Assembly (NCBI RefSeq): GCF_011386835.1
Contig: NC_088792.1
Coordinates: 287,060,001 to 287,124,000, forward strand
Direction: 5' to 3'
DNA: 64,000 nt
DNA from: Chrysemys picta bellii
Lineage: Eukaryota
Positions within the stretch are counted from its first letter, which is position 1, and each line of letters opens with the position of its first letter. Below the pieces are notes generated by a model. It was not told where the DNA came from. It saw nothing but the letters and a program-made list of their open reading frames with translations, and made no database searches. Positions 3,864-27,893 of this stretch are shown here, piece by piece. Made by a program: the position numbers and the translations under genes.

Positions 3864-4675
3864 TGTGACGAAATGGGGGAATTTTCTTATATTTTTGTGG
3901 TTTTCCAATGATTTGCATGCAGAGAGAGTGGGACTCAGTGTCCCTGGGTGTTACTGGTTTAACGAGGTGAGAGGAGAGGGAGTTTGTTGTTCCAGAGGAC
4001 CGGAGAGGGAACTTGGGACCCCAGCCGATGGCCTGGAGGATGGACACCCCAGCGACCGCTGACCTGATGACTCAGAGACCCAGCTCAGGAGTCACAGCCG
4101 GTTCTAGCCAGTGGGAGGACAATGGGCTGTGAAGAAAGGACCCCATGACCCAACCAGCCGGTTCCAGCCAGAGGAGGGCAGAGAGGAAAGGAGGCCCAGA
4201 CGACCCTGTTTACCTGGAGAGAAGACAATGGACAGAGGGGGACTTGGGGCTGGTGATCTGGTGATCTCAGATGCAGCTGGGAAGCAGGGGGGCTCTGGGC
4301 TGGAGAGGACGGGCAGGCAGAGCCCACCTGGATGCAAGGAGATTGGGATGTACTGGGCTGAGGGAGGTCAGGCCTGAGGCCCTGAGTGTTTCCTGTGTTG
4401 TGTTCAATGCTCAATAAACCCTCCTGTTTTACGCTGGCTGAGAGTCACTCCGGTCTAGAGAACAGGGTTGCGTCATCCCCTTCAGGGGGAGGGAGGCCCC
4501 GGGGGGTCCAGAGCGAGTGGACTCCCTGAGAGGGCCCACGGCGAGAGACAGACGTGCTAAGGCTCAGAGAGGTGCGGCTCCAGGAGGTGGAGGGGCCTAA
4601 CCCCGAGAGAGAGTGAACCCCCGAGAAGGGCTGTCTCACTGAAAGGGGTGCCACCTCCCACTCCTACGGACCGCA
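3864..4675 (+). mobile_element. LTR-like fragment (mirror copy at 30898..31446 is shorter)
   Basis: Starts TGTGACGAAATGGGG and has AATAAA at about 4413. No matching second LTR or target duplication was found. Confidence 0.45.
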
Positions 4676-7320: not shown

Positions 7321-7421
7321 CAGATTTCAGAGTAGCAGCCGTATTAGTCTGTATCCGCAAAAAGAACAGGAGTACTTGTGGCACCTTAGAGACTAACAAA
7401 GGTATTTGTGCATCAGCTTTC
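7321..7421. repeat. Penelope-like repeat fragment (mirror at about 24235..24336)
   Basis: The stretch agtagcagccgtattagtctgtatccgcaaaaagaacaggagtacttgtggcaccttagagactaacaaa resembles an abundant turtle repeat terminus; recognised from memory only. Confidence 0.5.
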
Positions 7422-10027
7422 AGAGTTCGGCTCCCATCTCTACCCCAAACTCAGTGTGACTTTGGGCAAATTGCTCAGTCTCTCTGTGCACCGGCCCAGG
7501 GCCCCCCAAAGCTCTAATCCGCTTCTGCTTGAGACAAGAGCAAGGCCGGCTGGCTTTCCTCTCGGAAAGAAAACCCTTCGCTCTGGTCTATGCCGTCTGT
7601 CCTGGGCTGGGCGAAAAATGAGCATGAGAATTTTTCAAAGTCTCCTTTAAAGGACCCCAAAAAAGGGAGGCAGGGGGAGGCATCCGTCATCTCCTCATTT
7701 TTTTTTTCCATTGACCAATTCAAACCATTACCGAGAGCAGGGATCTCTGTCCCCTCTCCCTGGCCTTCCATCCAGGGCAGGTGGAAGGTCCACGGCTCCC
7801 CATAGCTGCCTGCACGACTGTTACCCCAACCCAGCTCCAGCTTCTGCTCTGGCCTGGGGCCTCAGGGACCAAAGAGCTGCAGCCGGGCCGTGGTAAGAGC
7901 AGACAGCTGTGGGGAGCCGCGGACCCTCCATCTACCCTGGGTGGGGGGCCCGGAGGGCAGGGACACAGGCTGGGGGCTGCTCTTGAGTACCCCCACCCTG
8001 CACAGGTGGCAGGTCTGCAGCTTCCCACAGTTTCCCAGGATCCCCGGGCCTCTCTTACCCTGGCCGGGCTCCAGCTTCCAGCCTGGTCAGGAGATGGGGA
8101 CTCAGCGGAAGAGGAGGGGCAAGGAGCCAGGCCCGTGGCAGAAAACTGGGAAGTCCATGGCCTGTAAGGCCCCCCTGCCCAGTTCTGGCACCTCTAGCTG
8201 TATATATTGTACAATGAAATGTAAATATAATATTTACATCCCAGCTCATTTATTTTATAATGATCTGGTAAAAAGGAGAAAGAAAAGCCATTTTGCAGTA
8301 CTAGTGGGCTGTGACACTCTCGTATTTCTATGTCGCATTGTGTAAGCAAGTTGTTTTTAACGGAGGTGACACCTGGGGGAACGCAAGACAAATCAGTCTC
8401 CTGAAAAGGGGCCAGTGGTCTGGAAAGGTTCAGAGCCACCGTCCTGGCACACACACGGCATTCTGCTGCCACAGCCTCCTAGCGAAGTCCCTGTGTGCCT
8501 GGGAGCGAAGGAAAGCGCTGGGTTTCCCCATGGGGCAGCGAGCTGTGCAGCTGGCCCTGCCAAACAGGCCTCTTCCCATAGGATTCACTGATGAGCGATA
8601 AGGCCACGCTTTGGCTCCCCCTCGACTGTCCTGTGCACTGAGCTTTGCAGAAGTTGATTTTATAGTTTACTCCCATCACAATTATTCCTCTGTGCCCCCC
8701 AGGACCCTCCCCGCTGTGCACCTGGCAAATTACAGGATGGGGTGCTAGAAACAGACTGCTGCTAGTTGGTTCCTAGTCCACTCCCTGACCAAGTGCCCAC
8801 CCCTTTAGTCAGTGGCTCTCAAAGTGTGGGGTGCACCCCCCCATGGGAGCACAGAGGAATGTTTTGGGGGAGCACATGGCATGGCTGGAGCCAACCTGCA
8901 GGGCAGGGCAGGGAGGGAGTGCCACACTTCCATCCCTGCTCTGTCCCCAGAGCAGCTTTGCCCCTAACTGCAACTCCACACCCCACTGCCTGCCCCAGCC
9001 CAGCTCTGTTCTCATTCCCGCTCTGCCCCCAGACCAGCTCCGACCCCACCTCCCCCTTCAGCCCAAGCTTCACTGCTGAGGAAGCCTGGGCTGTGCAGTA
9101 ATGGGCGGGGGGAGGGGGGGCGGGCATGGACAGATTCAATTTCTGGTAAGTGGGGGGAGCGACTGGAAAACTTTGAGCATCATTGACCTGACTGACACTC
9201 TCAGAACAGTGACCTGACTTTAGTCACAACCTTTTGATTATCTCAAAACCAGGACCCTACACTCAGCATATCTGAACCTCCACCAGGGTCATGTTCCCCA
9301 CTGATTTAAAGAGAAAAAGGGGTTCTATGAAGGAGGCTGGGCACTGACTTGGTCTATTTCCACAGTTAGACAAAATAGTGACTCAAAGACACTGACAGGC
9401 AGTCAACACACTGTTTATTTCCGCTCTATTTCAGTTGACATCCCAGAGGGGTCTATGATCTAAGGTAACAATGGAGAGGTAGGTTTGAAAACTCTAAAGA
9501 CACGTAAAGAGGGGCCTTAGAGTCTAAAGAGGCAGAGAAGCCTCTCCAAGTACCTTTCAGGATCATGGACCAGGTGTTGGGATCCCAGCCCCCTCCCTAC
9601 CATTGGATACCACCCAGTTCCTGACACCCTCCTTCAGAACAGTGACTGGCTTTTGTCACAATTGTTCTTCTAATACCTCAGACTGGACCCTACAACCCAC
9701 AGCTCTGAACGCTCAGCAGGGTCCTGGTCCACCCCTTCACATGAAAGCGATCGCTATAAACAGGGAGGGGAACTGCCCTGGCAGAAACGAGGGGTGGGGT
9801 CTCTCTCTACAGGTTAAACATCAAATAGAGAATTAAAGGAACTAGAGCTCACCACGACACAAAAGTTTATACTTAAAATAAAATCCTTTAATTTGTAGTT
9901 CAGGAGAGGGATAAAATTGTACAAACCCCCAAACCCTAATACAAAGCATCGCACAGTCCCTGCTCCTCCAGGGAGACACTTAGAGCACAGAACAGAGTCC
10001 CAGGGTTACTGGAGTCGGTGGCTGGTT

Positions 10028-10681
10028 TCAGGAATCTCTGGGGCTGGTCCCCTCGCTCTCTCCTCCTGTCTCCATCTTCTCGCTGCTCCCCGGCTCCTTT
10101 CCCTCCGTGGCCAGGTTTCCTTCTCCTGCCTTCACCCCCTGGCAGACGGTGATGGGAACGGCTCTCCCTTCTGCAGCTGGCAGGGCCAGATGTGGCGCCT
10201 CGATGCAGAGCTGCCCATCCTGGGACAGGGAGCAGAGCACGGCCTCCCCGTTCACGTCTTCCGGCAGGAGAGTTTCTCTGCGGATCTCTCTGTATTCGTG
10301 GGAGCAGACTCCAGCCTCCGACGCCGTTTTCTTCTCCTGCTTCCCCGTCACCTTCCTCCCGTCCACTCTCACCATCAGCTCAGCTGGGGAGAAGCCGCTC
10401 ACGTCCATGGAGAGCTGGAACTTGTCCTTCCCCTGCGCCTGGGAGCCGGGCTCCTTCCCAGCCCCCTCCGCCAGGGACCGGCTGCTCGGCCTCGGCCTCC
10501 TCCCCTCGCCCTCCCCGCAGAGAAGGGGAGAAGCCAGAAGGAGGGAGTGTCTCAGTCGCTCCATCTCCTCCAGGTGCGTCTGCATGTCCCCCACCAGCTG
10601 GGCCAAGAGGCTGTGGGGCCCCGGCCCCAGGAGCCTGGGCAGTGGGGCGCTGCTGCCAAGCCACACTCGGAGCGGGAGCAT
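10028..10681 (-). CDS. hsp30: HSP30-type small heat-shock protein, copy A (217 aa, intronless)
   Basis: Alpha-crystallin domain FQLSMDVSGFSPAELMVRVDGRK..EYREIRRETLLPEDVN..VLCSLSQDGQLCIEAPHLALP resembles amphibian/fish Hsp30. ATTAAA poly(A) variant on minus at 9887-9892. Confidence 0.9.
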   Translation of the reverse strand: MLPLRVWLGSSAPLPRLLGPGPHSLLAQLVGDMQTHLEEMERLRHSLLLASPLLCGEGEGRRPRPSSRSLAEGAGKEPGSQAQGKDKFQLSMDVSGFSPAELMVRVDGRKVTGKQEKKTASEAGVCSHEYREIRRETLLPEDVNGEAVLCSLSQDGQLCIEAPHLALPAAEGRAVPITVCQGVKAGEGNLATEGKEPGSSEKMETGGESEGTSPRDS

Positions 10682-10806
10682 CCTGCCCCCCCGGGGCCTG
10701 GAGCCGCTGGGCCGAGTTCAGCTGCTGAGACGCTGCTGCTGGAGCTGCCTCTGCCTGACTCCCTGCGCGGCTGCTGCTCACTGGCTCCGGCAGCCCCCGC
10801 GCCGCC

Positions 10807-10851
10807 TTTTATAGCCTGCTCGGGCCGCGCCGGGCCCGTCGGGAACCTTCT
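10807..10851 (-). promoter_or_regulatory. TATA box (10807-10813) and heat-shock element with one mismatch (10837-10851), copy A
   Basis: Minus strand reads aGAAg gTTCc cGACg followed by TATAAAA. Copies B and D have GAA in the third unit. Confidence 0.85.
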
Positions 10852-11679
10852 CGCTGCTGGGGGGCGGGGCCTGGCGCTGCTCGGGAGGGGCGGGGCTGGG
10901 GGCGGGGCCTGGCTCTGCTCGGGAGGGGCGGAGCTAGGGCGGGGCCTGGCTCTGCTCGGCTGCGGGGGCCCAGCAGCTTCCAGCAGCCGCTGGCGGGCGG
11001 AGCTCCCGGATGGACTTTGCTGGATCCTTCCCGATCCCGCTGTGTTGGGGGGCGGGGGGGGGGCGGGTCTCATGCCGGGGGCACGGGCTGGAGCTGGGGG
11101 GAGGCGGGTTCAGCGGCGGGGCACAGGCTGGGGGGAGGCGGGTTCAGCGGCGGGGCACAGGCTGGAGGCCGGCTCTGACCGGGGGGTTCCGAGCCCGGTA
11201 GCACAGACCCCCGCTCCCGGACCAGCGCCGAGCAGAAGCCTCCCCCCCCCCCGCGAACGGGCTATTTCTCCCCCGCCCCCCGTTAGAGCCCCGCCCTTGA
11301 GGAATCAGATTCACATTTGGCATAAAGTGCCCCCCCGATCTGCCGTTTGTGGGGCTGCCAAACTTGGAGGGTTTCTCGGGTGCCTTGAAGCTCCTGCCTC
11401 GTGTTTGTGAATGGATGGGGGGGGGAGCTCGGACAGGATGGTCTCCCTGCTGCTCAGCCCCCCCCCCCAGCTCCTCCCTCAGACAGAGCCTCGGAGGAGC
11501 CGCTGGGAGCTGGGGGGGCAGAGACAGCTGCAGGGTGTGACCCCCCCGGACCGGACACGAGTGTCTGTTACTGTTTATTACACGTGCGCTGAGGGGGTGT
11601 TCGCCCGTCTCCCGTGTCTGCTCCGCACATGGACTGTCCAACCCGCCCCCGCCCAGACCCCGCCCGGGGACTGTCTCCC

Positions 11680-11870
11680 CGGCTCCAGCCCGTACCCCCG
11701 GCGTGAACCCCCCCCCCCCGGCTCCAGCCCGTACCCCCGGCCCTCAGCCCCCCCCCCCCCGGCTCCAGCCCGTACCCCCGGCCCTCAGCCCCCCCCCCCC
11801 GGCTCCAGCCCGTACCCCCGGCGTGAACCCCCCCCCCCGGCTCCAGCCCGTGCCCCCGGCATGACACCCG
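11680..11870. repeat. GC-rich minisatellite, about 5 units of about 40 bp
   Basis: Repeated ggctccagcccgtacccccgg(cgtgaa/ccctcag)ccccccccc units. Confidence 0.85.
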
Positions 11871-12079
11871 AGCCCCCCCCCCAACACAGCGGGATCGGGA
11901 AGGATCCAGCAAAGCCCGGCCCGGGAGCTCCGCCTACTAGCGGCTGCTGGAAGCTGCTGGGCCCCCGCAGCCGAGCAGAGCCAGGCCCCGCCCCCAGCCC
12001 CGCCCCTCCCGAGCAGCGCCAGGCCCCGCCCCCAGCCCCGCCCCTCCCGAGCAGCGCCAGGCCCCGCCCCCCAGCAACG

Positions 12080-12124
12080 GGAAGGTTCCCGAAGGGCCCG
12101 GCGCGGCCCCAGCAGGCTATAAAA
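12080..12124 (+). promoter_or_regulatory. Perfect three-unit heat-shock element (12080-12094) and TATA box (12118-12124), copy B
   Basis: gGAAg gTTCc cGAAg, then TATAAAA 23 bp later. An imperfect distal HSE (gATCg gGAAg gATCc) lies at 11893-11907, with several GC boxes between. Confidence 0.9.
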
Positions 12125-12248
12125 GGCGGCGCGGGGGCTGCCGGAGCCAGTGAGCAGCAGCCGCAGGGAGTCAGGCAGAGGCGGCTCCAGCAGCAGCGTC
12201 TCAGCAGCTGAACTCGGCCCAGCGGCTCCAGGCCCCGGGGGGGGCAGG

Positions 12249-12908
12249 ATGCTCCCGCTCCGAGTGTGGCTTGGCAGCAGCGCCCCAGTGTCCAGGCTCC
12301 TGGGGCCGGGGCCCCACAGCCTCTTGGCCCAGCTGGTGGGGGACGTGCAGACGCACCTGGAGGAGATGGAGCGACTGAGACACTCCCTCCTTCTGGCTTC
12401 TCCCCTTCTCTGCGTGGAGGGCGAGGGGAGGAGGCCGAGGCCGAGCAGCCGGTCCCTGGCGGAGGGGGCTGGGAAGGAGCCCGGCTCCCAGGCACAGGGG
12501 AAGGACAAGTTCCAGCTCTCCATGGACGTGAGCGGCTTCTCCCCAGCTGAGCTGATGGTGAGAGTGGACGGGAGGAAGCTGACGGTGATGGGGAAGCAGG
12601 AGAAGAAAACGGCGTCGGAGGCTGGAGCCTGCTCCCACGAATACAGGGAGATCCGCAGAGAAACTCTCCTGCCGGAAGACGTGAACGTGGAGGCCGTGCT
12701 CTGCTCCTTGTCCCAGGATGGGCAGCTCTGCATTGAGGTGCCACATCTGGCCCTGCCAGCTGCAGAAGGGAGAGCCGTTCCCATCACCGTCTGCCAGGGC
12801 GTGAAGGCAGGAGAAGGAAACCTGGCCATGGAGGGAAAGGAGCCGGGGAGCAGCGAGAAGATGGAGACAGGAGGAGAGAGCGAGGGGACCAGCCCCAGAG
12901 ATTCCTGA
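12249..12908 (+). CDS. hsp30: HSP30-type small heat-shock protein, copy B (219 aa, intronless)
   Basis: ATG 12249 to TGA 12908 is open, with a complete alpha-crystallin domain. AATAAA at 13131-13136. Confidence 0.92.
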   Translation: MLPLRVWLGSSAPVSRLLGPGPHSLLAQLVGDVQTHLEEMERLRHSLLLASPLLCVEGEGRRPRPSSRSLAEGAGKEPGSQAQGKDKFQLSMDVSGFSPAELMVRVDGRKLTVMGKQEKKTASEAGACSHEYREIRRETLLPEDVNVEAVLCSLSQDGQLCIEVPHLALPAAEGRAVPITVCQGVKAGEGNLAMEGKEPGSSEKMETGGESEGTSPRDS

Positions 12909-13641
12909 AACCAGCCACCAACTCCAGTAACACTAGGACTCTGTTCCATCGATTCCACTCAGCCCACCTAGCGAAGCCACTGGTCTGGGTGCGAATGTTC
13001 AGGAGCCCATTCCTGGGCTGCCAGGAGCTGTTCTGTGCTCTAAGTGTCTCCCTGGAGGAGCATGGACTGTGCGATGCTTTGTATTAGGGTTTGGGGTTTT
13101 GTACAATTTTATCCCTCTCCTGAATTACAAAATAAAAATCTTTATTTTAAGTACAAACTTGTGTCGTGGTGAGCTCTAGTTCCTTTAATTCTATATTTGA
13201 TGTTTAACCTGTAGAGAGAGACCCCACCCCTCGTTTCTGCCAGGGCTGTTCCCCTCCCTGTTTATAGCGATCGCTTTCATGTGAAGGGGTGGACCAGGAC
13301 CCTGCTGAGAGTTCAGAGCTGTGGGTTGTAGGGTCCAGTCTGAAGTATTAGAAAATCAGTTGTGACAAAAGCCAGTCACTGTTCTGAAGGAGGGTGTCAG
13401 GAACTGAAGGGGGCTGGGAACCCAACACCTGGGCCACGATCCTGAAAGGTACTTGAAGGAATTTCTCTGCCCCTTTAGACTCTAAGATCCCTCTTACACA
13501 TCTTTAGCATTTTCAAACCTCTTAGTTGTCACCTTAGATCATAGACCCCTCTGGGATGTCAAATTAAATAGAGCTTCTTAGTGGAAATAAACAGTGTGTT
13601 GACTGCCTGTCGCTGTCTTTAAGTCACTATTTTATGTCTAA

Positions 13642-13926
13642 AGGTACATCTACACTACAGGGGGGAGTCGATTTAAGATACGCAAATTCAGCTACGTGAA
13701 TAGCGTAGCTGAATTCGACGTATCCCGGCCGACTTACCCCGCTGTGAGGACGGCGGCAAAATCTACTTTTGCGGCTTCCTGTCGATGGCGCTTTCTCCCA
13801 CCTCCGCTGGTGGAGTAAGAGCGTCGATTCGGGGATCGATTGTCGCGTCCCAACGGGACGCGATTAATCGATCCCCGAGAGGTCGATTTCTACCCGCCGA
13901 TTCAGGCGGGTAGTGTAGACCTAGCC
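13642..13926. mobile_element. Non-autonomous Harbinger MITE (285 bp)
   Basis: TAA duplicated at 13639-13641 and 13927-13929; termini share the TCTACACTA core. The paralogous flanks of copies A and D have a single TAA at this site. Confidence 0.9.
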
Positions 13927-14659
13927 TAACTCTGGAAATAGACCAAGTCAGTTCTCAGTCTCCTTCATAGAAACACTGTTTTGAAGAGAAAAGGGTATCT
14001 GAGCTGATTTCAAGGCAGTAACAGACTTTTTAGGGTCACCACTTTGTTGCAGGTTTAGTATATTAAAATAAGTAAAAGAATACAATGATTGTTTTCTCTT
14101 GCATTGCAATTTGATGTTCCTGTTCAAATGCTCTGTGTAAATCAGTTCTGTGTTGTGTGTGAATGAGGAATGTGTGTGTTAAGATCTAAGTGTGAAGGCC
14201 ATCACCGTACCAGATGTTTTAGGGATGAACCGAAGACAGACGCAAGACATGGCGGTTGCAACACGCCCCTATTGAAGTGTCAGAGGAGGGCAGACCTATC
14301 GATGAGGCCAAGATAGCTGTGATCAAAACCAGAATGGGATAACTCCCTGAGAGACTTGATGAAAGAAGAAGATAAAGGATGAGAAAAACAATTTAAGAAA
14401 ACAAGCACTCTTCAAACGACAATTGATTACAGCATGAGAGTGCAAAACTCATTGGTCCCAAGGAAGGAAAATTACTATATATGTAGATAAATCTCTGTAT
14501 TAAGCATCTTCACATAACTTTCATATGACTTTATATTATGCCTCTCCATATAACCTTGTATTAAGCTATTTTTATACAATTCTATCTCAAGTCCTTTGAT
14601 ATAGGAATTTTGTATCGGATCCCTAGGTAGAAAAACTTATAGAAAACTTTGTGTTAGGC

Positions 14660-15716
14660 CCAGGGTCGGCAACCTTTCAGAAGAGGTGCACCTAGTCTTC
14701 ATTTATTCACTCTAATTTAAGGTTTTGCATGCCGGTAATACATGTTAACGTTTTTAGAAGGTCTCTTTCTATAATATGTAACTAAACTATTGTATGTAAA
14801 GTAAACAAGGTTTTCAAAATGTTTAAGAAGCGTCATTTAAAATGAAATTAAAATGCTGATCTTATGCCAGCAGCCTGCTCAGCTCGCTGCCAGCCTGAGG
14901 TTCTGTTCATCTAGGCCGGCAGCAGGCTGAGCAGGGCCTATGCCCGGGACCCCAGACCTGGGGGGAGGGGTTCAGGGCAGAGGGCTGGGGTGTGTGGGGG
15001 GGATCAGGGTACAGGGCTGGGGTGTGTAGGGCAGAGGGCTGGGTGTGTGTTGGGGTGTGGGGGTTCAGGGCATAGGGCTGGGAGTGTGGGAGGGGTGCAG
15101 GGCAGAAGGCTGGGGTGTGTGGGGGTATTCAGGGATCAGGGTAGAGGGCTGGGGTGTGTAGGGCAGAGGGCTGGGTGCGGGGGGGGGTGTTCAAGGGTCA
15201 GGTCAGAGGGCTGTGGCGGATGCAGGGCAGAAGGCTGGGTGTGGGGGGGGGTCAGGGCAGAGGGATGGGGCTGTGGGGGTGCAGGGCAGAAGGCTGGAGT
15301 GTGCGGGGGGTTCAAACGTCAGAGGGCTGGGGTGCTCGGCAGGGGGCTGGAAGGGATATGTCCTGTTCCACCCCCTTCCCCCAGGCTCTGTCCCTACCTC
15401 TCTCTGCGTCCTCTACGGAGCTGTGTGCACGCTGCCGCTCTTCCCCCTCCCCCTTCTAGGGCCATCAACTGATTGGTGCAGGGACGGAGAGGGGGAGGAG
15501 AAGGAAAGCACCACGCTGGGGGAAGAAGCAGGGGAGGGGGGAAGCTTGGCTGCTGCAGAACCAAGCTTCTGCCTCCTGCCCCTGCAGCGGAGAGTGGTGA
15601 GCAGGGTGGGGGGCTGAGTGGGGCTGGGGGCCGGGACCGCGGCAGGGAGCTGCGTGCCACTCAGAATCGGCTCCCGTGCTGTGTTTGGCACGCGTGCCGT
15701 AGGTTGCCGACCCCTG
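14660..15716. mobile_element. Non-autonomous hAT element with an internal G-rich simple repeat
   Basis: Termini (c)cagggtcggcaacc / ggttgccgacccctg and an 8-bp duplication TGTTAGGC (14652-14659, 15717-15724). Same family as 62200..62510. Confidence 0.85.
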
Positions 15717-17926
15717 TGTTAGGCCTTGGTATAATGTTATAGCCCCTAAGGATAGTTAAAGTAGAAGAAAAATGTCTTTTTGCTCAGAGTAGAATAAGAT
15801 CTCTCTCCCCTGCCCCCCCGCCACTCCCTTAATCAATTGCCCTGTTGAATAAGTGAGGTGTGAATGAGCAAGGCGTGGAAGGCAAGCACCACCAGACAGC
15901 TGCAACAGTTGGAGAGGGGATGGAAGCCAGACCCAAAAACAATAAAACTTGTCAAGTGGGCTCACTGAAGAAGAGCAGATATACTGAGGGCCTTGTGGGT
16001 TAGAAGCAAGCACCTTCTTTTGCAAACACCCTCTTTGAACAGCACTGGGACAACACCCAGAAAAAAAGCAGTACAAAGGACCAACAGACACAGATACAGA
16101 TCTTGAATCTGGTATAGATTTGCATGAGAGGGAAGCTGCTATAAATGTGAGGTGTCTTGCAGAGGCCCCCGGGTCTCGTCTTGTCAACATGAGAGCATCG
16201 ATCCGGATCGGCAGAAGCCCAGCTCTATCCTTCCCCATCTAACTCACCTGGCCAGTGAAGTTAAGGTAACAACAAGACGGAGCATGCTTGTGTGTGAGTG
16301 TAATACAACATATGCATATGATACAGTGTGGATTTGGTACATGTATTACCAATAAATGTGGTGCTTTGCCTTATTCCCCTGAAAAGATCCTGTGCAGTAC
16401 TTTGAGTACAGTTGAAACTGTCAACCAGATAGGCAGGGACAGAACAGGGGTTTAGGTATCTGAGCAGCTGACTTGGTACCCCTGGCTGGCTGATGGGCCA
16501 GAGATCAGTGTCTCACTCCACTCCGGAGCCACAGCCTCAAACCCTCTCCCGGAGTCAGACACCTATGCCAAGTTAGCCGCCTAGGTCCTACTAGCCAAAC
16601 CCACCTCTCTCTCTGTGTTGCACGATTCCTGGCTCACCCTATTTTCCCCATGGCCCCAGCTGTCCTTTGTGGGATGCTCTGCTGTTCCTCTGCCTAGTGG
16701 GGACCAGTCTCTGGCTCGTCTCCCGTGAGGGCTGGCAGGTACGAGGTGTTCGGCATGGTGGAGCGGCCCTACAGGATTGAACTGACTAGTTTGAGAATTC
16801 TGCTTCCGCGGCCTCTGGAGTTTCAGCCTTCGAGCAGCTCTGTAGCTGGGGAGGGCTTCAGCACCGAGCCAGCTTTGCAAATGCTGCTTGGAGGAAAGAT
16901 TGGCCCCTATAGGCACCATCACCCTGCGGGACGACGGCACCTGTATCCCCCTGCGTGGTCCAGCAAGGGCTTTTGGCACCCAGCCATCACGTCTCCTTGG
17001 CAGAGACCCCCCCATCTCTCTCCCTCCTGACGGGGGAACTTTCCAGGCTGCACAGTTCCCTCCCGCAGCCCACCCTGACCCAAACGACCTGCATCTGCGC
17101 TTTGCTTCCTCTTCAGAGACGGAACGCTCAGTGATTATTAGTTACTATCCAGCTCTTTCCGCGCAAGCACAGTCATTGTTACGGGGAAAGCATTACAGAG
17201 AAAGCACATTACCAGCAATACAAGAACCCACACATGAGGCAGGGTGACTATGCTACAAAGCTTGAAGTCAGCCCAGCTCCAGCCAAGGGCTCTGCCAAGT
17301 GTCAATCCTTCTAGCCCTTCCTTAAGGCTTGCCCTCCCCACTCTGAGAACTATAGTACAGACAGTCCCTGGGCCACAGAGATATGTAAACTTCGTACAAT
17401 CAAAGCTCCTAAGGGTACTGCAGGGTATTACCATATATGTCAGAACCGTCTACAGGGTTACGTGCCTCTGGGCCTGGTATTTGATTCCTAGTCCCCTCTC
17501 TAATCAGGCACTCCCCCCACTTCCCCTCAATACGTCAACCCGGCCCTTTATCACAGCTGCTCTGCTCTTATCTTAGATCTGCACCCAACAATCAACAGCT
17601 CTGAACCCTCAAAACCATCATGTTCCCTCACTTGCAGAGAGATGAGAACTGACCTGGGACAAAGGCAGTTTATTTCCAAAGGTGAAACATGAAATAGCAA
17701 ATCAAGCAGACAGAGCTCACCAGACAGCACAGTTTGTCTTTACTAGAAAGGTTGATATTGAATTTTAAAATTCAAGACAAGTATAAACATTCTATCAAAA
17801 TGCATAAAAAGAGCCAAGAAAGGGAGCATCCCCCAGTCACTTCTCTTCCAGAGAGATTCTGACAGCCCAGGAATATGCTCAGGACCGTTCACACCAAGAT
17901 TTGGTTACTGGAGTCGGTGGCTGGTT

Positions 17927-18576
17927 TCAGGAATCTCTGGGGCTGGTCCCCTCGCTCTCTCCTCCTGTCTCCATCTCGCTGCTCCCCGGCTCCTTTCCCT
18001 CCGTGGCCAGGTTTCCTTCTCCTGCCTTCACCCCCTGGCAGACGGTGATGGGAACGGCTCTCCCTTCTGCAGCTGGCAGGGCCAGATGTGGCGCCTCGAT
18101 GCAGAGCTGCCCATCCTGGGACAGGGAGCAGAGCACGGCCTCCACGTTCACGTCTTCCGGCAGGAGAGTTTCTCTGCGGATCTCCCTGTATTCGTGGGAG
18201 CAGACTCCAGCCTCCGAGGCCGTTTTCTTCTCCTGCTTCCCCGTCACCGTCAGCTTCCTCCCGTCCACTCTCACCATCAGCTCAGCTGGGGAGAAGCCGC
18301 TCACGTCCATGGAGAGCTGGAACTTGTCCTTCCCCTGCGCCTGGGAGCCGGGCTCCTTCCCAGCCCCCTCCGCCAGGGACCGGCTGCTCGCCTCGGCCTC
18401 CTCCCCTCACCCTCCCCGCAGAGAAGGGGAGAAGCCAGAAGGAGGAAGTGCCTCAGTCGCTCCATCTCCTCCAGGTGCGTCTGCACGTCCCCCACCAGCT
18501 GGGCCAAGAGGCTGTGGGGCCCCAGGAGCCTGGGCACTGGGGCGCTGCTGCCAAGCCACACTCGGAGCGGGAGCAT
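17927..18576 (-). pseudogene. hsp30: HSP30-type gene, copy C, frameshifted and lacking the proximal HSE
   Basis: ATG 18576 to TGA 17927 is 650 bp, not a multiple of 3. A 1-bp deletion near 18390 (gaggcgagc vs gaggccgagc in A and B) splits it into ORFs 18301..18675 and 17927..18310. Confidence 0.8.
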
Positions 18577-18869
18577 CCTGCCCCCCGGGGCCTGGAGCCG
18601 CTGGGCCGAGTTCAGCTGCTGAGACGCTGCTGCTGGAGCCGCCTCTGCCTGACTCCCTGCCCGGCTGCTGCTCACTGGCTCCGGCAGCCCCCGCGCCGCC
18701 TTTTAAAGGGCTCTGCTCGGGAGGGGCGGGGCTGGGGGCGGGGCCTGGCTCTGCTCGGGAGGGGCGGGGTCTTGCTTGCTCGGCTGCGGGGGCCCAGCAA
18801 GTTCCAGCAGCTGCTAGCGGGCGGAGCTCCCGGGCGGGCTTTGCTGGATCCTTCCCGATCCCGCTGTGT

Positions 18870-20000
18870 CGGGTCTCACGCCGGGGGCACGGGCTGGAGC
18901 CGGGGGGTGTCAGAGCCGGGGGCACGGGCTGGAGCGGGGCGGGGTCAGAGCCGGGGGCACGGGCTGGAGCCGGGGGGGGGGTTCACGCCGGGGGCACGGG
19001 CTGCAGCCGGGGGGGGGGTCAGAGCCGGGGTCACGGGCTGGAGCGGGGCGGGGTCAGAGCCGGGGGCACGGGCTGGAGACGGGGGTGGGTTCAGGGCCGT
19101 GGGCACGGGCTGGAGCCGGGGGGGGGTCAGGCCTGGGGCACGGGCTGGAGCCGGGGGGTGTCAGAGCCGGGGGTACGGGCTGGAGCGCGGGGGCGGGGGG
19201 GGTTCAGGGCCGGGGGTACGGGCTGGAGCGCGGGGGGGGTTCAGGGCCGGGGGCACGGGCTGGAGCCGGGGGGGGGGTCAGAGCCGGGGGCACGGGCTGG
19301 AGCCTTCACGCCGGGGGCACGGGCTGCAGCCGGGGGGGGGGTCAGAGCCGGGGTCACCGGGCCTGGAGCGCGGGGGGGGGGGTCAGAGCCGGGGGGCACG
19401 GGCTGGAGACGGGGGGGTCAGAGCCGGGGGGCACGGGCTGGAGCGGGGGGGGGGGTTCACGCCGGGGGCACGGGCTGCAGCCGGGGGGGGGGTCAGAGCC
19501 GGGGTCACGGGCTGGAGCGCGGGGGGGGGTTCAGGGCCGGGGGCACGGGCTGGAGCCGTGGGGGGGGTCAGGCCTGGGGAACGGGCTGGAGCCGGGGGGG
19601 GGGTTCACGCCGGGGGTACGGGCCAGAGCCGGGGGGGGGTTCAGGGCCGGGGTACGGGCTGGAGACGGGGGGGGGGTTCAGGCCTGGGAACGGGCTGGAG
19701 CCGGGGGGGGGGTTCACGCCGGGGGTACGGGCCAGAGCCGGGGGGGGCGGGTTTCAGGGCCGGGGGTACGGGCTGGAGACGGGGTGGGTTCAGGGCCGTG
19801 GGCACGGGCTGGAGCCGGGGGGGGGTCAGGCCTGGGGAACGGGCTGGAGCCGGGCGGGGGTCAGGCCTGGGGAACGGCTGGAGCCGGGGGGGGGGGGTTC
19901 AGGCCGGGGGTACGGGCTGAAGCCGGGGGGGGGGGTCAGGCCGGGGGTACGGGCTGGAGCCGGGGGGGGGTTCAGGCCGGGGGTACGGGCTGGAGCCGGG
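18870..20000. repeat. G-rich minisatellite, roughly 30 units of 33-38 bp
   Basis: Repeated gccgggggcacgggctggagccggggggggtcaga variants; reverse complement of the short array at 11680-11870. Confidence 0.9.
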
Positions 20001-20772
20001 GAGACAGTCCCCGGGCGGGGTCTGGGCGGGGGGGGCGGGTTGGACAGTCCATTGTGCGGAGCAGACACGGGAGACGGGCGAAACACCCCCCACAGCGCAC
20101 GTGTAATAAACAGTAACAGACACTCGTGTCCGGTCCGGGGGGGTCACACCCTGCAGCTGTCTCTCTGCCCTCCCCCCCCCCCCCCCACTTCCCAGCGGCT
20201 CCTCCTAGGCTCTGTCCATTCACTAACACGAGGCAGGAGCTTCAGGGCACTTGAGAAACCCTCCAAGTTGGGCAGCCCCCACAAACGGCAGATCCCGACC
20301 CCTGCTGGGGCAGGGGCTGGAAGGGGGGGGCACTTTATCCAAATGTGACTGGTTCCTCAAGGGCGGGGCTCTAACGGGGGGGGGGGGGAGATATCCCGTT
20401 CGCGGGGGGGGGGGAGGTTTCTGCCCGGCGCTGGTCCGGGAGCGGGTGTCTGTGCTACCGGGCTCGGAACCCCCCGGGCCGAGCCGGGCTCCAGCCTGTG
20501 CCCGCCGCTGAAACCCGCCCCTCCCCCAACACAGCGGGATCGCGAAGGATCCAGCAAAGCCCGGCCCGGGAGCTCCGCCCCCTAGCGGCTGCTGGAAGCT
20601 GCTGGCCCCCCCCCAGCCCCGCCCCTCCCGAGCAGCGCCAGGCTCCGCCCTCAGCCCCGCCCCGGCCGAGCAGAGCCAGCCCCCCCTCGGCCCCGCCCCT
20701 CCCGAGCAGCGCCAGCCCCCGCCCCCAGCCCCGCCCCTCCCGAGCAGAGCCAGGCCCCGCCCCCCAGCAGCG

Positions 20773-20817
20773 GGAAGGTTCCCGAAGCGCCCGGCGCGGC
20801 CCGAGCAGGCTATAAAA
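20773..20817 (+). promoter_or_regulatory. Perfect heat-shock element (20773-20787) and TATA box (20811-20817), copy D
   Basis: gGAAg gTTCc cGAAg followed by TATAAAA at the same spacing as in copy B. Confidence 0.9.
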
Positions 20818-20942
20818 GGCGGCGCGGGGGCTGCCGGAGCCAGTGAGCAGCAGCCGGGCAGGGAGTCAGGCAGAGGCAGCTCCAGCAGCAGCGTCTCAGC
20901 AGCTGAACTCGGCCCAGCGGCTCCAGGCCCCGGGGGGGCAGG

Positions 20943-21587
20943 ATGCTCCCGCTCCGAGTGTGGCTTGGCAGCAGCGCCCCAGTGCCCAGGCTCCTGGGGC
21001 CCCACAGCCTCTTGGCCCAGCTGGTGGGGGACGTGCAGACGCACCTGGAGGAGATGGAGCGACTGAGACACTCCCTCCTTCTGGCTTCTCCCCTTCTCTG
21101 CGGGGAGGGCGAGGGGAGGAGGCCGAGCAGCCGGTCCCTGGCGGAGGGGGCTGGGAAGGAGCCCGGCTCCCAGGCGCAGGGGAAGGACAAGTTCCAGCTC
21201 TCCATGGACGTGAGCGGCTTCTCCCCAGCTGAGCTGAGGGTGAGAGTGGACGGGAGGAAGCTGACGGTGACGGGGAAGCAGGAGAAGAAAACGGCGTCGG
21301 AGGCTGGAGTCTGCTCCCACGAATACAGAGAGATCCGCAGAGAAACTCTCCTGCCGGAAGACGTGAACGGGGAGGCCGTGCTCTGCTCCCTGTCCCAGGA
21401 TGGGCAGCTCTGCATCGAGGCGCCACATCTGGCCCTGCCAGCTGCAGAAGGGAGAGCCGTTCCCATCAGCGTCTGCCAGGGCGTGAAGGCAGGAGAAGGA
21501 AACCTGGCCAGGGAGGGAAAGGAGCCGGGGAGCAGCGAGATGGAGACAGGAGGAGAGAGCGAGGGGACCAGCCCCAGAGATTCCTGA
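20943..21587 (+). CDS. hsp30: HSP30-type small heat-shock protein, copy D (214 aa, intronless)
   Basis: Open ORF with a complete alpha-crystallin domain. AATAAA at 21775-21780. Confidence 0.92.
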   Translation: MLPLRVWLGSSAPVPRLLGPHSLLAQLVGDVQTHLEEMERLRHSLLLASPLLCGEGEGRRPSSRSLAEGAGKEPGSQAQGKDKFQLSMDVSGFSPAELRVRVDGRKLTVTGKQEKKTASEAGVCSHEYREIRRETLLPEDVNGEAVLCSLSQDGQLCIEAPHLALPAAEGRAVPISVCQGVKAGEGNLAREGKEPGSSEMETGGESEGTSPRDS

Positions 21588-24500
21588 AACCAGCCACCGA
21601 CTCCAGTAACTCAGCCCATCTAGCGCAGCCATTGGTCTGGGTGTGAATGTTCGGGAGCCCATTCCTGGGCTGCCAGGAGCTGGTCTTTGCTCTAAGTGGA
21701 GGAGCAGGGACTGTTCGATGCTTTGTATTAGGGTTTGGGGGTTTGTACAATTTTATCCCTCTCCTGAATTACAAAATAAAAATCTTTATTTTAAGTACAA
21801 ACTTGTGTCGTGGTGAGCTCTAGTTCCTTTAATTCTATATTTGATGTTTAACCTGTAGAGAGAGACCCCACCCCTCGTTTCTGCCAGGGCCGTTCCCCTC
21901 CCTGTTTATAGCGATCGCTTTCACGTGAGGGGGCGGACCAGGACCCTGCTGAGCGTTCAGAGCTGTGCGTTGCAGGGTCCAGTCTGAGGTATTAGAAGAA
22001 CAATTGTGACAAAAACCCAGTCACTGTTCTGAAGGAGGGTGTCAGGAACTGAAGGGGGCAGGGAACCCAACACCTGGGCCATGATCCTGAAAGGTACTTG
22101 AAGGGCTTCTCTGCCTCTTTAGACTCTAAGGCCCCTCTTTAGGCGTCTTTAGAGTTTTCAAACCTACCTCTCCATTGTCACCTTAGATCATAGACCCCTC
22201 TGGGATGTCAACTTAAATAGAGCGGAAATAAACAGTGTGTTGACTGCCTGTCAGTGTCTTTGAGTCATTATTTTGTCTAACTCTGGAAATAGACCAAGTC
22301 AGTTCTCAGCCTCCTTCATAGAAACCCTTTTTCTCTTTAAATCAGGGGGGAACATGACCCTGGTGGAGGTTCAGATATGCTGAGTGTAGGGTCCTGGTTT
22401 TGAGATAATCAAAAAGTTGTGACTAAAGTCAGGTCACTGTTCTGAGAGTGTTAGTCAGGTCAGTGGTGCTCAAAGTTTTCCAGTCGCTCCCCCCACTTAC
22501 CAGAAATTTAATCTGTCCACGCCCCCCCCTCCCCACCCCCATTACTGCACAGCCCAGGCTTCCTCAGCAGTGAAGCTTGGGCTGAAGGGGGAGGTGGGGT
22601 CGGAGCTGGTCTGGGGGAAAAGCGGGAATGAGAACAGAGCTGGGCTGGGTCAGGCAGTGGGGTGTGGAGCTGCTGTTAGGGGGAGAGCAGGACTGGGTGC
22701 TGAAGGCAGAGCTGGTCTGGGGACAGAGCAGAGATGGAAGTGTGGCACTCCCTCCCTTCCCCGCAGGCTGGCTCCAGCCATGCCATGTGCCCCCCCAAAA
22801 CATTCCTCAGTGCTCCCATGGGGGGGTGCACCCCACACTTTGAGAGCCACTGGCTAAAGGGGTGGGCACTTGGTCAGGGAGGGGACTAGGAACCAACTAG
22901 CAGCACTCTGTTTCTAGCACCCCATCCTGTAATTTGCCAGGTGCACACCGGGGAGGGTCCTGGGGGGCACAGAGGAATAATTGTGATGGGAGTAAACTAT
23001 AAAATCAACTTCTGCAAAGCTCAGTGCACAGGACAGTCGAGGGGGAGCCAAAGCATGGCCTTATCGCTCATCAGTGAATCCTAGGGGAAGAGGCCTGTTT
23101 GGCAGGGCCAGCTGCACAGCTCGCTGCCCCATGGGGAAACCCAGCGCTTTCCTTCGCTCCCAGGCACACAGGGACTTCACTAGGAGGCTGTGGCAGCAGA
23201 ATGCCGTGTGTGTGCCAGGATGGTGGCTCTGAACCTTTCCAGACCACTGGCCCCTTTTCAGGAGACTGATTTGTCTTGCTACCCCCAGGTGTCACCTCCC
23301 TTAAAAACAACTTGCTTACACAATGCGACATAGAAATACGAAAGTGTCACAGCCCACTAGTACTGAAAAATGGCTTTTCTTTCTCCTTTTTACCATATCA
23401 TTATAAAATAAATCAGCTGGAATGTAAATATTATATTTACATTTCATTGTACAATATATACAGCTAGAGGTGCCAGAACTGGGCAGGGGGGCCTTACAGG
23501 CCATGGACTTCCCAGTTTTCTGCCACGGGCCTGGCTCCTTGCCCCTCCTCTTCCGCTAAGTCCCCACCTCCTGACCAGGCTGGAAGCTGGAGCCCGGCCA
23601 GGGTAAGAGAGGCCCGGGGATCCTGGGAAACTGTGGGAAGCTGCAGACCTGCCACCTGTGCAGGGTGGGGGCACTGAAGAGCAGCCCCCAGCCTGTGTCC
23701 CTGCCTTCCGGGCCCCCTACCCAGGGTAGATGGAGGGTCTGCGGCTCCCCACAGCTGTCTGCTCTTACCACGGCCCGGCTGCAGCTCTTTGGTCCCTGAG
23801 GCCCCAGGCCAGAGCAGAAGCTGGAGCTGGGTTGGGGTAACAGTCGTGCAGGCAGCTATGGGGAGCCGTGGACCTTCCACCTGCCCTGGATGGAAGGCCA
23901 GGGCGAGGGGACAGAGATCCCTGCTCTCGGTAATGGTTTGAATTGGTCAATGGAAAAAAAAATGAGATGACGGATGCCTCCCCCTGCCTCCCTTTTTTGG
24001 GGTCCTTTAAAGGAGACTTTGAAAAATTCTGATGCTCATTTTTCGCCCAGCACAAGACAGACGGCATAGACCAGAGCGAAGGGTTTTCTTTCCGAGAGGA
24101 AAGCCAGCCGGCCTTGCTCTTGTCTCAAGCAGAGGCGGATTAGAGCTTTGGGGGGCCCTGGGCCGGTGCACAGGGAGACTGAGCAATTTGCCCAAAGTCA
24201 CACTGAGTTTGGGGCAGAGATGGGAACCGAACTCTGAAAGCTTATGCACAAATACCTTTGTTAGTCTCTAAGGTGCCACAAGTACTCCTGTTCTTTTTGG
24301 GGATACAGACTAATACGGCTGCTACTCTGAAATCTGACTTCCTGGATCTCTGGCTTGTGCCTTAACTGCAGAACTCTGATGTACAGTGGGGGCGTCACAC
24401 ACCTAAGCATGATACGGTCGAATTTTCAAAAGTATTTTGTATTGGACTGATTCGGCTCCCACTGAAGTCAGTGGTAAACCCTGGATAAGCTGAGAATCCT

Positions 24501-27500: not shown

Positions 27501-27893
27501 CCTGAGCTCTTCCCATGCTGGCTTCCAGCTGCCTCATAAACCCGCCTGTGTGAGCGTCTCCGGTGCATTGGTCCCTGCGGAGTGGACTCTACCAGGAATC
27601 CCCCGTTCCCTCCCCCCCGGGTGCTGGGCCTCAGGCCGAGGAAACATTCAACCCCTGCACAGCTGGAATGGGGAGGGGTTGGTTTCCATGGAGCTGGGGG
27701 AATTTATGCTGGGCTGTGGCTCTGCCGAGGTTAGTGGGGTGCTCCAGGGAGTTCAGGCTCAGCCAGAGCTGTAGGCTGTCCCCCAGGTCTCCTGGCCGCC
27801 TATCTGTGGGTGCGCACCTTGGGGGCAGGCCTGCCCCTCACCCTGGTGCTGGGGCTGACGTTCCTCTCTCTCCTCCGCCCCACCCCTCAAGAG

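What the first reader, a model, noticed from the sequence alone, without database searches (positions are those of the whole stretch)
9900..21800. Nested palindromes of HSP30 genes with two conflicting conversion signatures
The order is A(-) B(+) spacer C(-) D(+). Each pair is a local inverted repeat, and the large palindrome maps A to D and B to C. Two indels group A+B against C+D (GPGPH vs GPH; SEKMET vs SEMET). Three substitutions group A+D against B+C (5' UTR gcAgctcc vs gcGgctcc; Arg codon AGA vs AGG at B 12647; Gly GGG vs Val GTG at B 12688) (seen). No single duplication tree gives both groupings, which points to patchwise gene conversion within pairs and between arms (inference).
Basis: partly seen in the sequence, partly recalled or inferred. 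Interest (0 to 1): 0.75.

Follow-up and report, generated by a model that had tools for sequence, protein, structure and literature searches.

The report
Turtle HSP30 genes shuffled by conversion

Summary

The window is Chrysemys picta bellii CM062319.1:287,060,001-287,124,000.

- A third partition, AC|BD at B 12800.
- C looks decayed: a 1-bp frameshift, a 58-bp promoter deletion that removes the heat-shock element, and no gene call.
- The inverted duplication spans 1-40200.
- At least 11 further copies lie within 510 kb, so four-copy logic is incomplete.

On the four copies alone, conversion is not demonstrable (PHI p=0.5). Both indels are copy-number changes of short tandem units, and all four combinations of them occur in the family. 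Two of the three "A+D" substitutions are retained ancestral states.

Conversion is still the best explanation. Gene bodies are far more alike than their flanks (A-D 0.9% vs 4.7%, A-B 2.0% vs 7.4%). C is a mosaic against its positional twin H (5' part 6.3%, 3' part 0.8%, flank 0.9%). D carries A-type flank where its homologues O/M3/Eo1 carry another.

Public read contigs could not verify most sites. The scan already reported the same process in a neighbouring cluster (s1-335690). This is a new member of a known kind.

The parts
10028..10681 (-). HSP30C-like gene A, intact, 217 aa (protein P0005). It has a private 6-bp in-frame deletion (VDGRK-VTGKQ) shared only with copy I in cluster III.
   Evidence: ORF; PF00011 E=1.8e-13; alignments.
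12249..12908 (+). HSP30C-like gene B, intact, 219 aa (P0006). It is the most diverged of the four, with 9 private substitutions among them.
17927..18576 (-). HSP30C-like copy C, a probable pseudogene. A 1-bp deletion between 18391 and 18390 shifts the frame after codon ~63. No gene was called here in the public annotation.
   Evidence: 91-aa ORF; locus L002 lists only B and D. The frameshift is not verified by reads.
20943..21587 (+). HSP30C-like gene D, intact, 214 aa (P0001). It carries the GGGGCC and GGCCGA hexamer deletions and the AGA-less (ancestral) form.
12081..12093 (+). Perfect heat-shock element GAAggTTCccGAA of B, 25 bp upstream of TATAAAA at 12118-12124.
20774..20786 (+). Perfect heat-shock element of D, upstream of the TATA box at 20811-20817.
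10838..10850 (-). Heat-shock element of A with one mismatch (GAC for GAA); TATA box at 10807-10813.
18700..18712 (-). Damaged promoter of C. The junction of a 58-bp deletion at 18709/18708 removes the heat-shock element, and the TATA box is altered (CTTTAAAAG).
1..10967 (.). Left arm of the large inverted duplication, cut by the window's start and ending in gene A with its proximal promoter. It lacks a 3.9-kb segment that the right arm and other copies have.
20660..40200 (.). Right arm of the large inverted duplication, beginning with gene D. It holds the extra segment 26986-30896 and a Harbinger insertion at 34770-39622. Substitution divergence from the left arm is 1.4% distally and 3.3% in the proximal 2.5 kb.
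9366..13641 (.). Small palindrome A/B, with arms 9366-11131 and 11805-13641. The gene bodies differ by 2.0% and the 3' flanks by 7.4% (substitutions).
17904..21610 (.). Small palindrome C/D, with arms 17904-18721 and 20800-21610 at 97.4% identity.
18871..20001 (.). G-rich 37-bp satellite of about 30 units between C and D. Related arrays lie between pair partners in the other clusters and in Malaclemys.
16409..17903 (.). C-type 3' flank, orthologous to the flanks of H, N, Malaclemys M2/M4 and Emys Eo2. It differs from H's flank by 0.87%.

Best explanation
The four genes are members of a young, palindrome-rich segmental-duplication complex of heat-inducible HSP30 (alpha-crystallin-domain) genes in the painted turtle. 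At least 15 copies lie in at least 5 clusters over about 510 kb.

The basic unit is old. It consists of two head-to-head pairs in the order (-)(+) spacer (-)(+), and it is also found in Emys, in part in Malaclemys, and as a colinear direct copy 190 kb away (K L N O).

In this window, an inverted copy of the DNA on A's side (at least 11 kb of alignable sequence) has replaced the original 3' flank of the D-position gene. That created the large palindrome.

On top of this duplication history, non-reciprocal copying between paralogues (interlocus gene conversion, in short patches limited to the transcription unit and proximal promoter) has kept gene bodies 1-2% apart while their flanks are 3-7% apart. 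This has produced mosaics:
- C has the c-type flank and 3' half, but a 5' half of the common type.
- D has an A-like body, including the private 12688 G, but carries d-type marks (12829 G; also 12800 C, which B, E and G share) near its 3' end, and A-type flank beyond.

Shown: the anatomy, the gene-versus-flank contrasts and the mosaic boundaries.
Inferred: that the mechanism is conversion, and which copy was the donor.

The AGA-less form in C and D is a retained ancestral state. The GGGGCC deletion in C, D and G is a slippage-prone change that may or may not have been spread by conversion.
For: Identity:
- PF00011 hits in all four copies.
- Nearest proteins are named heat shock protein 30C-like, from Chrysemys, Malaclemys and Emys.

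Family size and architecture.

The 4-gene unit in other species and clusters.

Gene versus flank:
- A-B: 16/809 vs 44/598, p=1.4e-6.
- A-D: 7/796 vs 28/594, p=6.8e-6; against the 2.5-kb flank, 81/2441, p=7.8e-5.
- B-D: p=6e-6.

A 100-bp sliding profile of A against D shows 0-3% inside the transcription unit and 4-12% on both sides. Selection does not explain this: A and D differ by 5 non-synonymous and 1 synonymous change, and the family-wide pN/pS is 0.5.

C against H:
- Flank 13/1494 (0.87%).
- 3' part 4/482.
- 5' part 20/315, p=2.4e-8.
- H, N, M2 and M4 share a block of c-type 5'UTR marks plus a CGT-repeat insertion that C lacks.

D against O:
- O's 3' flank matches M3, M5, Eo1 and Eo4 and is absent from the window.
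- D+O is rejected (AU 0.022) and A+D is in the ML tree.

Reticulation:
- 52 of 120 site pairs fail the four-gamete test among 9 copies, and 158 of 528 among 15.
- PHI p=0.0018 with 9 copies and 0.003 with 15 copies at w=200.
- A GENECONV-like test finds within-pair tracts elsewhere in the family: H-I over 12679-12928, p=0.0005.
- Emys copies cluster by species with 100% bootstrap.
Against: Formal recombination tests are unstable:
- PHI is p=0.50 for the four window copies, 0.083 for 15 copies at the standard w=100, and 0.30 when H and N are left out.
- No pair of window copies has a significant shared tract.
- The clustering of A-D differences is not significant, p=0.17.
- {C,H,N} monophyly is not rejected, AU 0.148.
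- Tree-only simulations with extreme rate heterogeneity (alpha 0.1) reach the observed number of incompatible pairs in 19% of runs.

Donors cannot be named from substitutions. C's 5' half is no closer to D than to K, L or I.

The public read data were Logan contigs only. They did not show the GGGGCC-deleted form, the C frameshift or the 12688 G state. Copy-specific variants therefore remain unverified against polishing errors.
Confidence: 0.68

Rival explanations
1. There has been no conversion among the window's four copies. The conflicting characters are retained ancestral paralogue differences sorted by a complex series of segmental duplications with breakpoints in or next to the genes, together with recurrent slippage at the tandem hexamer and trinucleotide and a few parallel point mutations.
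For: - Both AB|CD indels are unit-number changes of tandem duplications.
- The AGA states are trans-specific.
- All four indel combinations exist.
- 12183 sits in a CpG context.
- The four-copy PHI is p=0.5.
- The palindrome's inner edges coincide with gene ends at 12931 and 17904, so rearrangement junctions rather than conversion tracts could explain some mosaics.
- High-heterogeneity simulations sometimes reach the observed level of incompatibility.
Against: - It does not explain why the transcription units are islands of 0-3% divergence within 4-12% diverged DNA on both sides, with Fisher p of about 1e-6, at pN/pS of 0.5 or higher.
- It does not explain why C differs from H by 6.3% in the 5' part only, when flank and 3' part differ by 0.9%.
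- Only about 0.05 chance parallelisms are expected among the four copies (my calculation).
Confidence: 0.17
2. This is an assembly or polishing artefact. With about 16 copies that are 98-99% alike, reads mapped to the wrong copy during consensus polishing have scrambled paralogue-specific variants. The 1-bp frameshift in C is a homopolymer-length error.
For: - Informative sites among 13 common-type copies are almost randomly incompatible, with no spatial structure (80 of 190 pairs, PHI p=0.30). Scrambling would give exactly this.
- All four read sets, including the likely source sample, show one extra A at 17766, in an A4 run near C. The assembly therefore may carry a 1-bp homopolymer error there, unless that contig comes from H's near-identical flank.
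- No contig showed the GGGGCC-deleted form, the D hexamer deletion, the C frameshift or the 21370 G.
Against: - Contigs drop minority variants, so absence proves nothing (tool statement).
- The AGA-less form and both 5'UTR states were seen in independent runs.
- The large features cannot be polishing noise: a 20-substitution block with a 15-bp indel separating C from H, the 58-bp promoter deletion, arm-specific TE insertions and 1.4-3.3% arm divergence.
- In-frame hexamer indels are not typical consensus errors.
- Comparable mosaics occur in independently assembled Malaclemys and Emys.
Confidence: 0.12

Closest known systems
Concerted evolution of clustered heat-shock genes by gene conversion: hsp70 clusters of Stratiomyidae (PMC3071340) and ectopic conversion among Drosophila duplicates (review, PMC3924832)
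   Same: Intronless, heat-inducible chaperone genes sit in tight clusters that include divergently oriented pairs. Coding and proximal promoter sequences are homogenised while intergenic DNA and flanks diverge and are structurally polymorphic. Pseudogenes occur alongside intact copies.
   Different: These are small HSPs (alpha-crystallin domain) of a vertebrate rather than hsp70 of insects. Homogenisation is incomplete (1-2% between copies), giving a shuffled mosaic instead of near-identity. The clusters are embedded in 10-40-kb segmental duplications.
Interlocus gene conversion in human segmental duplications (PMC4467073)
   Same: Short unidirectional patches are copied between paralogous segments that are 96-99% identical. 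This produces variants shared between copies that conflict with the duplication tree.
   Different: There the process was shown with population data. Here a single assembly and cross-species comparison give only indirect evidence.
Large palindromes of primate sex chromosomes maintained by arm-to-arm conversion (from my own knowledge: Rozen et al. 2003; not retrieved here)
   Same: Inverted arms longer than 10 kb around a spacer, with a gene copy in each arm and a derived variant (12688 G) shared only by the two arm genes.
   Different: Arm identity here is only 96.7-98.6%, with arm-specific TE insertions and a 3.9-kb deletion, so the arms as a whole are not being homogenised. The locus is not known to be sex-linked, and the high similarity is confined to the ~0.9-kb gene.
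Earlier finding of this scan, s1-335690: four HSP30 genes 138 kb beyond this window
   Same: The same genome, the same gene family, the same (-)(+)(-)(+) unit (here K L N O in locus L010), and the same conclusion of sharply bounded homogenisation by conversion.
   Different: That cluster keeps the ancestral d-type flank. This window has the extra inverted duplication and a decayed copy C.

Membership tests
HSP30 subfamily of small heat-shock proteins (HSP20/alpha-crystallin, PF00011) | Alpha-crystallin domain above Pfam's gathering score | tested here: met
   50.9-61.6 bits against a cutoff of 20.8 for A, B, D and the C fragment.
HSP30 subfamily of small heat-shock proteins (HSP20/alpha-crystallin, PF00011) | Closest relatives are vertebrate HSP30 proteins (turtle, lizard, frog) | tested here: met
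   74-96% identity to turtle 'heat shock protein 30C-like' proteins and 41-47% to frog HSP30C/D-like proteins.
HSP30 subfamily of small heat-shock proteins (HSP20/alpha-crystallin, PF00011) | Heat-shock promoter (HSE nGAAnnTTCnnGAAn upstream of a TATA box) and a single uninterrupted ORF | tested here: met
   perfect HSE in B and D, one mismatch in A, deleted in C. ORFs of 214-219 aa without interruption.
HSP30 subfamily of small heat-shock proteins (HSP20/alpha-crystallin, PF00011) | Induction by heat or other stress | not tested
Hsp30c is listed as temperature-responsive in Mauremys gonads (PMC11025153), which is a lead only.
Interlocus gene conversion / concerted evolution | Paralogues are more alike within a sharply bounded tract than in the DNA on both sides, and purifying selection does not explain it | tested here: met
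   A-D 0.9% vs 4.7%, A-B 2.0% vs 7.4%; pN/pS 0.5, and 5 non-synonymous to 1 synonymous change between A and D.
Interlocus gene conversion / concerted evolution | Mosaic copies: different parts of one copy have different nearest relatives | tested here: met
   C against H and N; D against O, M3 and A.
Interlocus gene conversion / concerted evolution | Significant recombination statistic (PHI, GENECONV) | tested here: inconclusive
   PHI is 0.50 (4 copies), 0.0018 (9 copies), 0.083 or 0.003 (15 copies at w=100 or w=200) and 0.30 (13 copies). GENECONV-like tracts are significant only for H-I, J2-O and K-O.
Interlocus gene conversion / concerted evolution | Paralogues cluster by species rather than by position | tested here: inconclusive
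   Emys copies form a 100% clade. However, H/N group with M2/M4, and O groups with M3/M5, across species, so homogenisation is partial.
Interlocus gene conversion / concerted evolution | Copy-specific variants confirmed by reads phased to each copy | tested here: inconclusive
   only collapsed Logan contigs were available, and minority forms were mostly not seen.
Sex-chromosome-type palindromes kept identical by arm-to-arm conversion | Arm-to-arm identity above about 99.9% along the whole arm | tested here: not met
   1.4-3.3% substitutions, a 3.9-kb indel and a 4.85-kb Harbinger in one arm only.

The most novel reading that the evidence does not exclude
After its split from Malaclemys, the painted turtle expanded HSP30 into an autosomal, ampliconic, palindrome-bearing array of at least 15 copies (against five sampled here in Malaclemys). 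In this array, patchy conversion does not simply homogenise the copies. It reshuffles a small set of amino-acid and indel variants: all four GPGPH/GPH x SEKMET/SEMET combinations exist, and pN/pS is about 0.5. This would create a combinatorial repertoire of small chaperones, possibly tied to this species' extreme cold, anoxia and thermal biology.
Probability: 0.12. Interest if true: 0.55.

Novelty: new member of a known kind. Interest (0 to 1): 0.3.

Why it matters
The locus is a clean vertebrate example of how stress-gene arrays evolve by segmental duplication, inverted duplication, conversion limited to the transcription unit, and decay of single copies.

For annotation, orthology of turtle HSP30 genes cannot be read from gene trees; only the flanks are reliable. 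Copy C should be treated as a probable pseudogene.

For the scan, a 'conflicting signatures' argument on four copies is unsafe when unsampled paralogues exist, and polarising states with outgroups changes the reading.

It does not open a new mechanism.

Tried and rejected
1. Four-copy recombination tests have no power: PHI p=0.5 and Rm=1 on substitutions.

2. Tree-only simulations were meant to show that homoplasy cannot give the observed incompatibility. They were not decisive, because under extreme rate heterogeneity 5-19% of simulations reach it.

3. AU tests of positional clades: only C+D and D+O were rejected. {C,H,N}, {B,G,L}, {A,K}, A+B and B+C were not.

4. Clustering of the A-D differences as a sign of a d-type patch gave p=0.17.

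5. Checking the diagnostic sites with reads. All runs offered were Logan contigs in which the roughly 16 copies collapse. Region 18422-18695 of C received no contigs, because they were placed on D. The GGGGCC-deleted form, the C frameshift and the 21370 G were not seen, which is not evidence of absence.

6. Naming D as donor of C's 5' half: substitutions do not single D out.

7. Literature searches for turtle HSP30 clusters or HSP30 gene conversion found only expression studies.

8. The idea that the large palindrome maps B to C as arms was rejected. B's and C's flanks are unrelated and their homology stops at the gene ends (12931 and 17904). The true arms end with A and D.

I ran no structure prediction and no search of the 1.84-billion-protein representative library, because the family scan and the word search left nothing open.


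Full report
**What is there**

ORF listing and Pfam show four HSP20/alpha-crystallin genes:
- A(-) at 10028-10681, 217 aa.
- B(+) at 12249-12908, 219 aa.
- C(-) at 17927-18576.
- D(+) at 20943-21587, 214 aa.

The nearest proteins are 'heat shock protein 30C-like' from emydid turtles. The window's own proteins lie on Chrysemys picta bellii GCA_011386835.2, CM062319.1. D's position fixes the window at 287,060,001-287,124,000.

Each intact gene has a proximal heat-shock element, GAAggTTCccGAA, about 25 bp upstream of TATAAAA. The element is perfect in B and D and has one mismatch in A. GC-box-bearing 38-bp repeats lie further upstream.

C has three defects:
- It lacks the heat-shock element through a 58-bp deletion, with the junction at 18709/18708.
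- Its TATA box is altered.
- It has a 1-bp deletion between 18391 and 18390 that truncates the ORF to 91 aa.

No gene is called at C in the public annotation. C is therefore a probable pseudogene. The frameshift alone could be a consensus error (see Read check below).

**Check of the observation**

- The GGGGCC indel at B 12302-12307 and the AGA indel at B 12856-12858 group A+B against C+D.
- B 12183, 12647 and 12688 group A+D against B+C.

The alignment adds one AB|CD substitution in the promoter repeat (12055) and two AC|BD sites (12017 in the repeat, and 12800). All three possible partitions are therefore present, interleaved along 850 bp.

Private substitutions number 2 in A, 9 in B, 5 in C and 3 in D. 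From those counts only about 0.05 chance parallel hits are expected (my calculation). The conflict is real but rests on eight characters.

Self-comparison shows that the large inverted repeat runs from position 1, where the window's edge cuts it, to 10967 on the left, and from 40200 back to 20660 on the right.

The right arm carries a 3.9-kb segment (26986-30896) that the left arm has lost. Other copies of the arm have this segment. The right arm also carries a Harbinger at 34770-39622.

The arms differ by 1.4% (distal 3.2 kb) to 3.3% (proximal 2.5 kb) in substitutions.

B and C do not belong to the arms. Their similarity stops exactly at the gene ends (12931 and 17904), and their 3' flanks are unrelated.

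**The family is much larger**

The same chromosome carries further copies:
- J1 and J2 at 286.76 Mb, next to a CYLD-like gene.
- E and F at 286.91 Mb.
- G, H and I at 287.21 Mb.
- K, L, N and O at 287.26-287.27 Mb.

NCBI lists still more proteins.

K L N O with their flanks form a colinear direct copy of window 8630-21594. G H I is the same unit without its first gene. E/F sits at the centre of another palindrome made of the same arm sequence.

Emys orbicularis has two head-to-head pairs in the same (-)(+)...(-)(+) order, with the c-type flank in the matching place. Malaclemys has a tandemly duplicated c/d pair plus one gene next to the CYLD-like gene.

The four-gene order is therefore old. 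The flanks define positional classes:
- a: A, K
- b: B, G, L
- c: C, H, N, M2, M4, Eo2
- d: O, M3, M5, Eo1

**The large palindrome is an overprint**

O's 3' flank matches those of M3, M5, Eo1 and Eo4 but is absent from the window. D instead continues into an inverted copy of A's flank. The D-position gene therefore lost its original flank to an inverted duplication of the A side.

**Polarity changes the reading**

With Malaclemys, Emys and more distant turtles as outgroups:
- SEMET, GPGPH, Val147, 12183 A and 12647 A are ancestral.
- A and D merely retain the old base at 12183 and 12647. B and C share the derived G with many other copies.
- C and D merely retain the AGA-less form.

Both indels are losses or gains of one unit of a tandem duplication. 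All four combinations occur in the family:
- GPGPH+SEKMET in A, B, E, F, H, I and K.
- GPH+SEMET in C and D.
- GPGPH+SEMET in J1, L, N, O and others.
- GPH+SEKMET in G.

Apparent singletons are shared with distant copies: C's 12385 T with J1 and L, C's 12614 C with J1, D's 12556 G with J2, and A's 6-bp deletion with I.

**Formal tests**

PHI (substitutions, w=100) gives:

| Copies tested | p |
|---|---|
| 4 window copies | 0.50 |
| 9 copies | 0.0018 |
| 15 copies | 0.083 (0.003 at w=200; 0.006 with indels) |
| 13 copies, without the divergent H and N | 0.30 |

The four-gamete test fails for 52 of 120 site pairs among 9 copies and 158 of 528 among 15.

Simulations on the ML tree reach 52 incompatible pairs in 1% of runs at alpha 1, 5% at alpha 0.3 and 19% at alpha 0.1.

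A GENECONV-like permutation test finds tracts for H-I (pair partners, 12679-12928), J2-O and K-O at p=0.0005. It finds none for pairs within the window.

AU tests reject C+D (0.013) and D+O (0.022), place A+D in the ML tree, and leave the other constraints open.

These tests point to reticulation in the family. They are not robust, and they say little about the four window copies on their own.

**The stronger evidence: genes against flanks**

| Pair | Gene body | 3' flank | p |
|---|---|---|---|
| A-B | 2.0% | 7.4% | 1.4e-6 |
| A-D | 0.9% | 4.7% (3.3% over 2.5 kb) | 6.8e-6 (7.8e-5) |
| B-D | 1.9% | 6.6% | 6e-6 |

A 100-bp profile of A against D shows 0-3% across the transcription unit and proximal promoter, 4-12% upstream, and 3-7% downstream apart from one indel-disturbed 100-bp window.

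Purifying selection does not account for this. A and D differ by five non-synonymous changes and one synonymous change, and pN/pS is about 0.5 across the family.

For C the contrast runs the other way. Its flank differs from H's by 0.87% and its 3' part by 0.83% (4/482). Its 5' part differs by 6.3% (20/315, p=2.4e-8), plus a 15-bp CGT-repeat indel.

H, N, M2 and M4 share the c-type 5'UTR block that C lacks. C's 5' part, upstream of about B 12422-12446, was therefore replaced by common-type sequence after the window/cluster-III duplication.

D combines three kinds of sequence: an A-like body, d-type marks near its 3' end (12829 G as in O, N, M3 and M5; 12800 C as in M3 and M5, though also in B, E and G; the AGA-less form is also there but is the ancestral state), and A-type sequence from the 3'UTR outward.

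Each of these patterns needs at least one non-reciprocal transfer, or a rearrangement with a breakpoint inside the gene.

**Read check**

One search and one laying were allowed, and every run offered was kept as Logan contigs. On 17600-21700 the contigs mostly represent the majority paralogue forms.

Confirmed: the AGA-less form (run X14) and both 5'UTR states (X1, X9, X2).

Not seen in any contig: the GGGGCC-deleted form, D's hexamer deletion, C's frameshift and the G at 21370. Such contigs drop minority variants, so this is not evidence of absence.

All four runs show one more A at 17766, in an A4 run. The assembly may carry a 1-bp homopolymer error there, unless that contig comes from H's near-identical flank. 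C's frameshift, in a CC run, may likewise be an error.

**Comparison with what is known**

This matches the pattern described for clustered hsp70 genes (PMC3071340), for ectopic conversion among Drosophila duplicates (PMC3924832), and for interlocus conversion in human segmental duplications (PMC4467073).

It does not meet the defining feature of sex-chromosome palindromes, which is near-identical arms.

Literature searches found no description of turtle HSP30 clusters or their conversion, only expression reports.

The scan itself had already reported the neighbouring cluster K L N O as evolving in concert (s1-335690), and had noted at least 16 copies (s1-335653). I confirmed the copy number and the colinearity myself.

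**Verdict**

Conversion is the best explanation (about 0.68). The rivals are duplication history plus slippage (0.17) and assembly scrambling (0.12). This is a new member of a known kind and of modest interest.

Noticed in passing
window 17927-18712: Copy C looks like a decaying gene: a 1-bp frameshift, a 58-bp promoter deletion that removes the heat-shock element, an altered TATA box and no annotated gene. A second frameshifted copy (J2) lies at L009:7209-8170.
   Followed up: partly
window 18871-20001; also 11677-11860 and L005:987-1739, 8303-8805, 16143-16664: A G-rich 37-41-bp satellite sits between the partners of head-to-head pairs. It is conserved in place between Chrysemys and Malaclemys but varies in length from 0.2 to 1.1 kb. 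It may form G-quadruplexes or act as part of the bidirectional promoter region.
   Followed up: no
window 4421-4672 versus 26986-30896: The left arm lacks a 3.9-kb segment that the right arm and the arm copies in L001 and L003 all carry. This points to a deletion in the left arm after the inverted duplication.
   Followed up: partly
window 7493-9968 versus L001:10800-13270: In the 2.5 kb next to gene A, the left arm is closer to the arm copy in cluster I (2.5%) than to its own palindrome partner (3.3%). The flanks are therefore mosaic too, or the arms were not duplicated from each other in one step.
   Followed up: no
window 17766: Contigs from four public runs, including the likely source sample, have AAAAA where the assembly has AAAA. 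This is a probable 1-bp homopolymer error in the assembly, or sequence from H's near-identical flank.
   Followed up: no
window 14967-15334: A degenerate G-rich array with a 30-32-bp period lies in the spacer between B and C. It is also present in the matching spacers of clusters III and IV.
   Followed up: no
L003:17187-18142 (H) and L010:17153-18130 (N): H and N keep an old, diverged 5'UTR and N-terminal block that they share with Malaclemys M2 and M4; at one site (12224 A) they also match Emys Eo2. This shows that some positions have escaped homogenisation. H and its partner I are identical over the last ~250 bp (p=0.0005), which is a within-pair tract.
   Followed up: partly
L010:634-5226: A 1530-aa LTR-retrotransposon pol ORF (RT, RNase H, integrase, SCAN) lies next to cluster IV.
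   Followed up: no
L005 (Malaclemys) 5272-12808 versus 13187-20657: In Malaclemys the c/d gene pair is part of a 7.5-kb direct tandem duplication (97.5-98.7% identity), not a palindrome. The array's architecture differs between closely related genera.
   Followed up: partly
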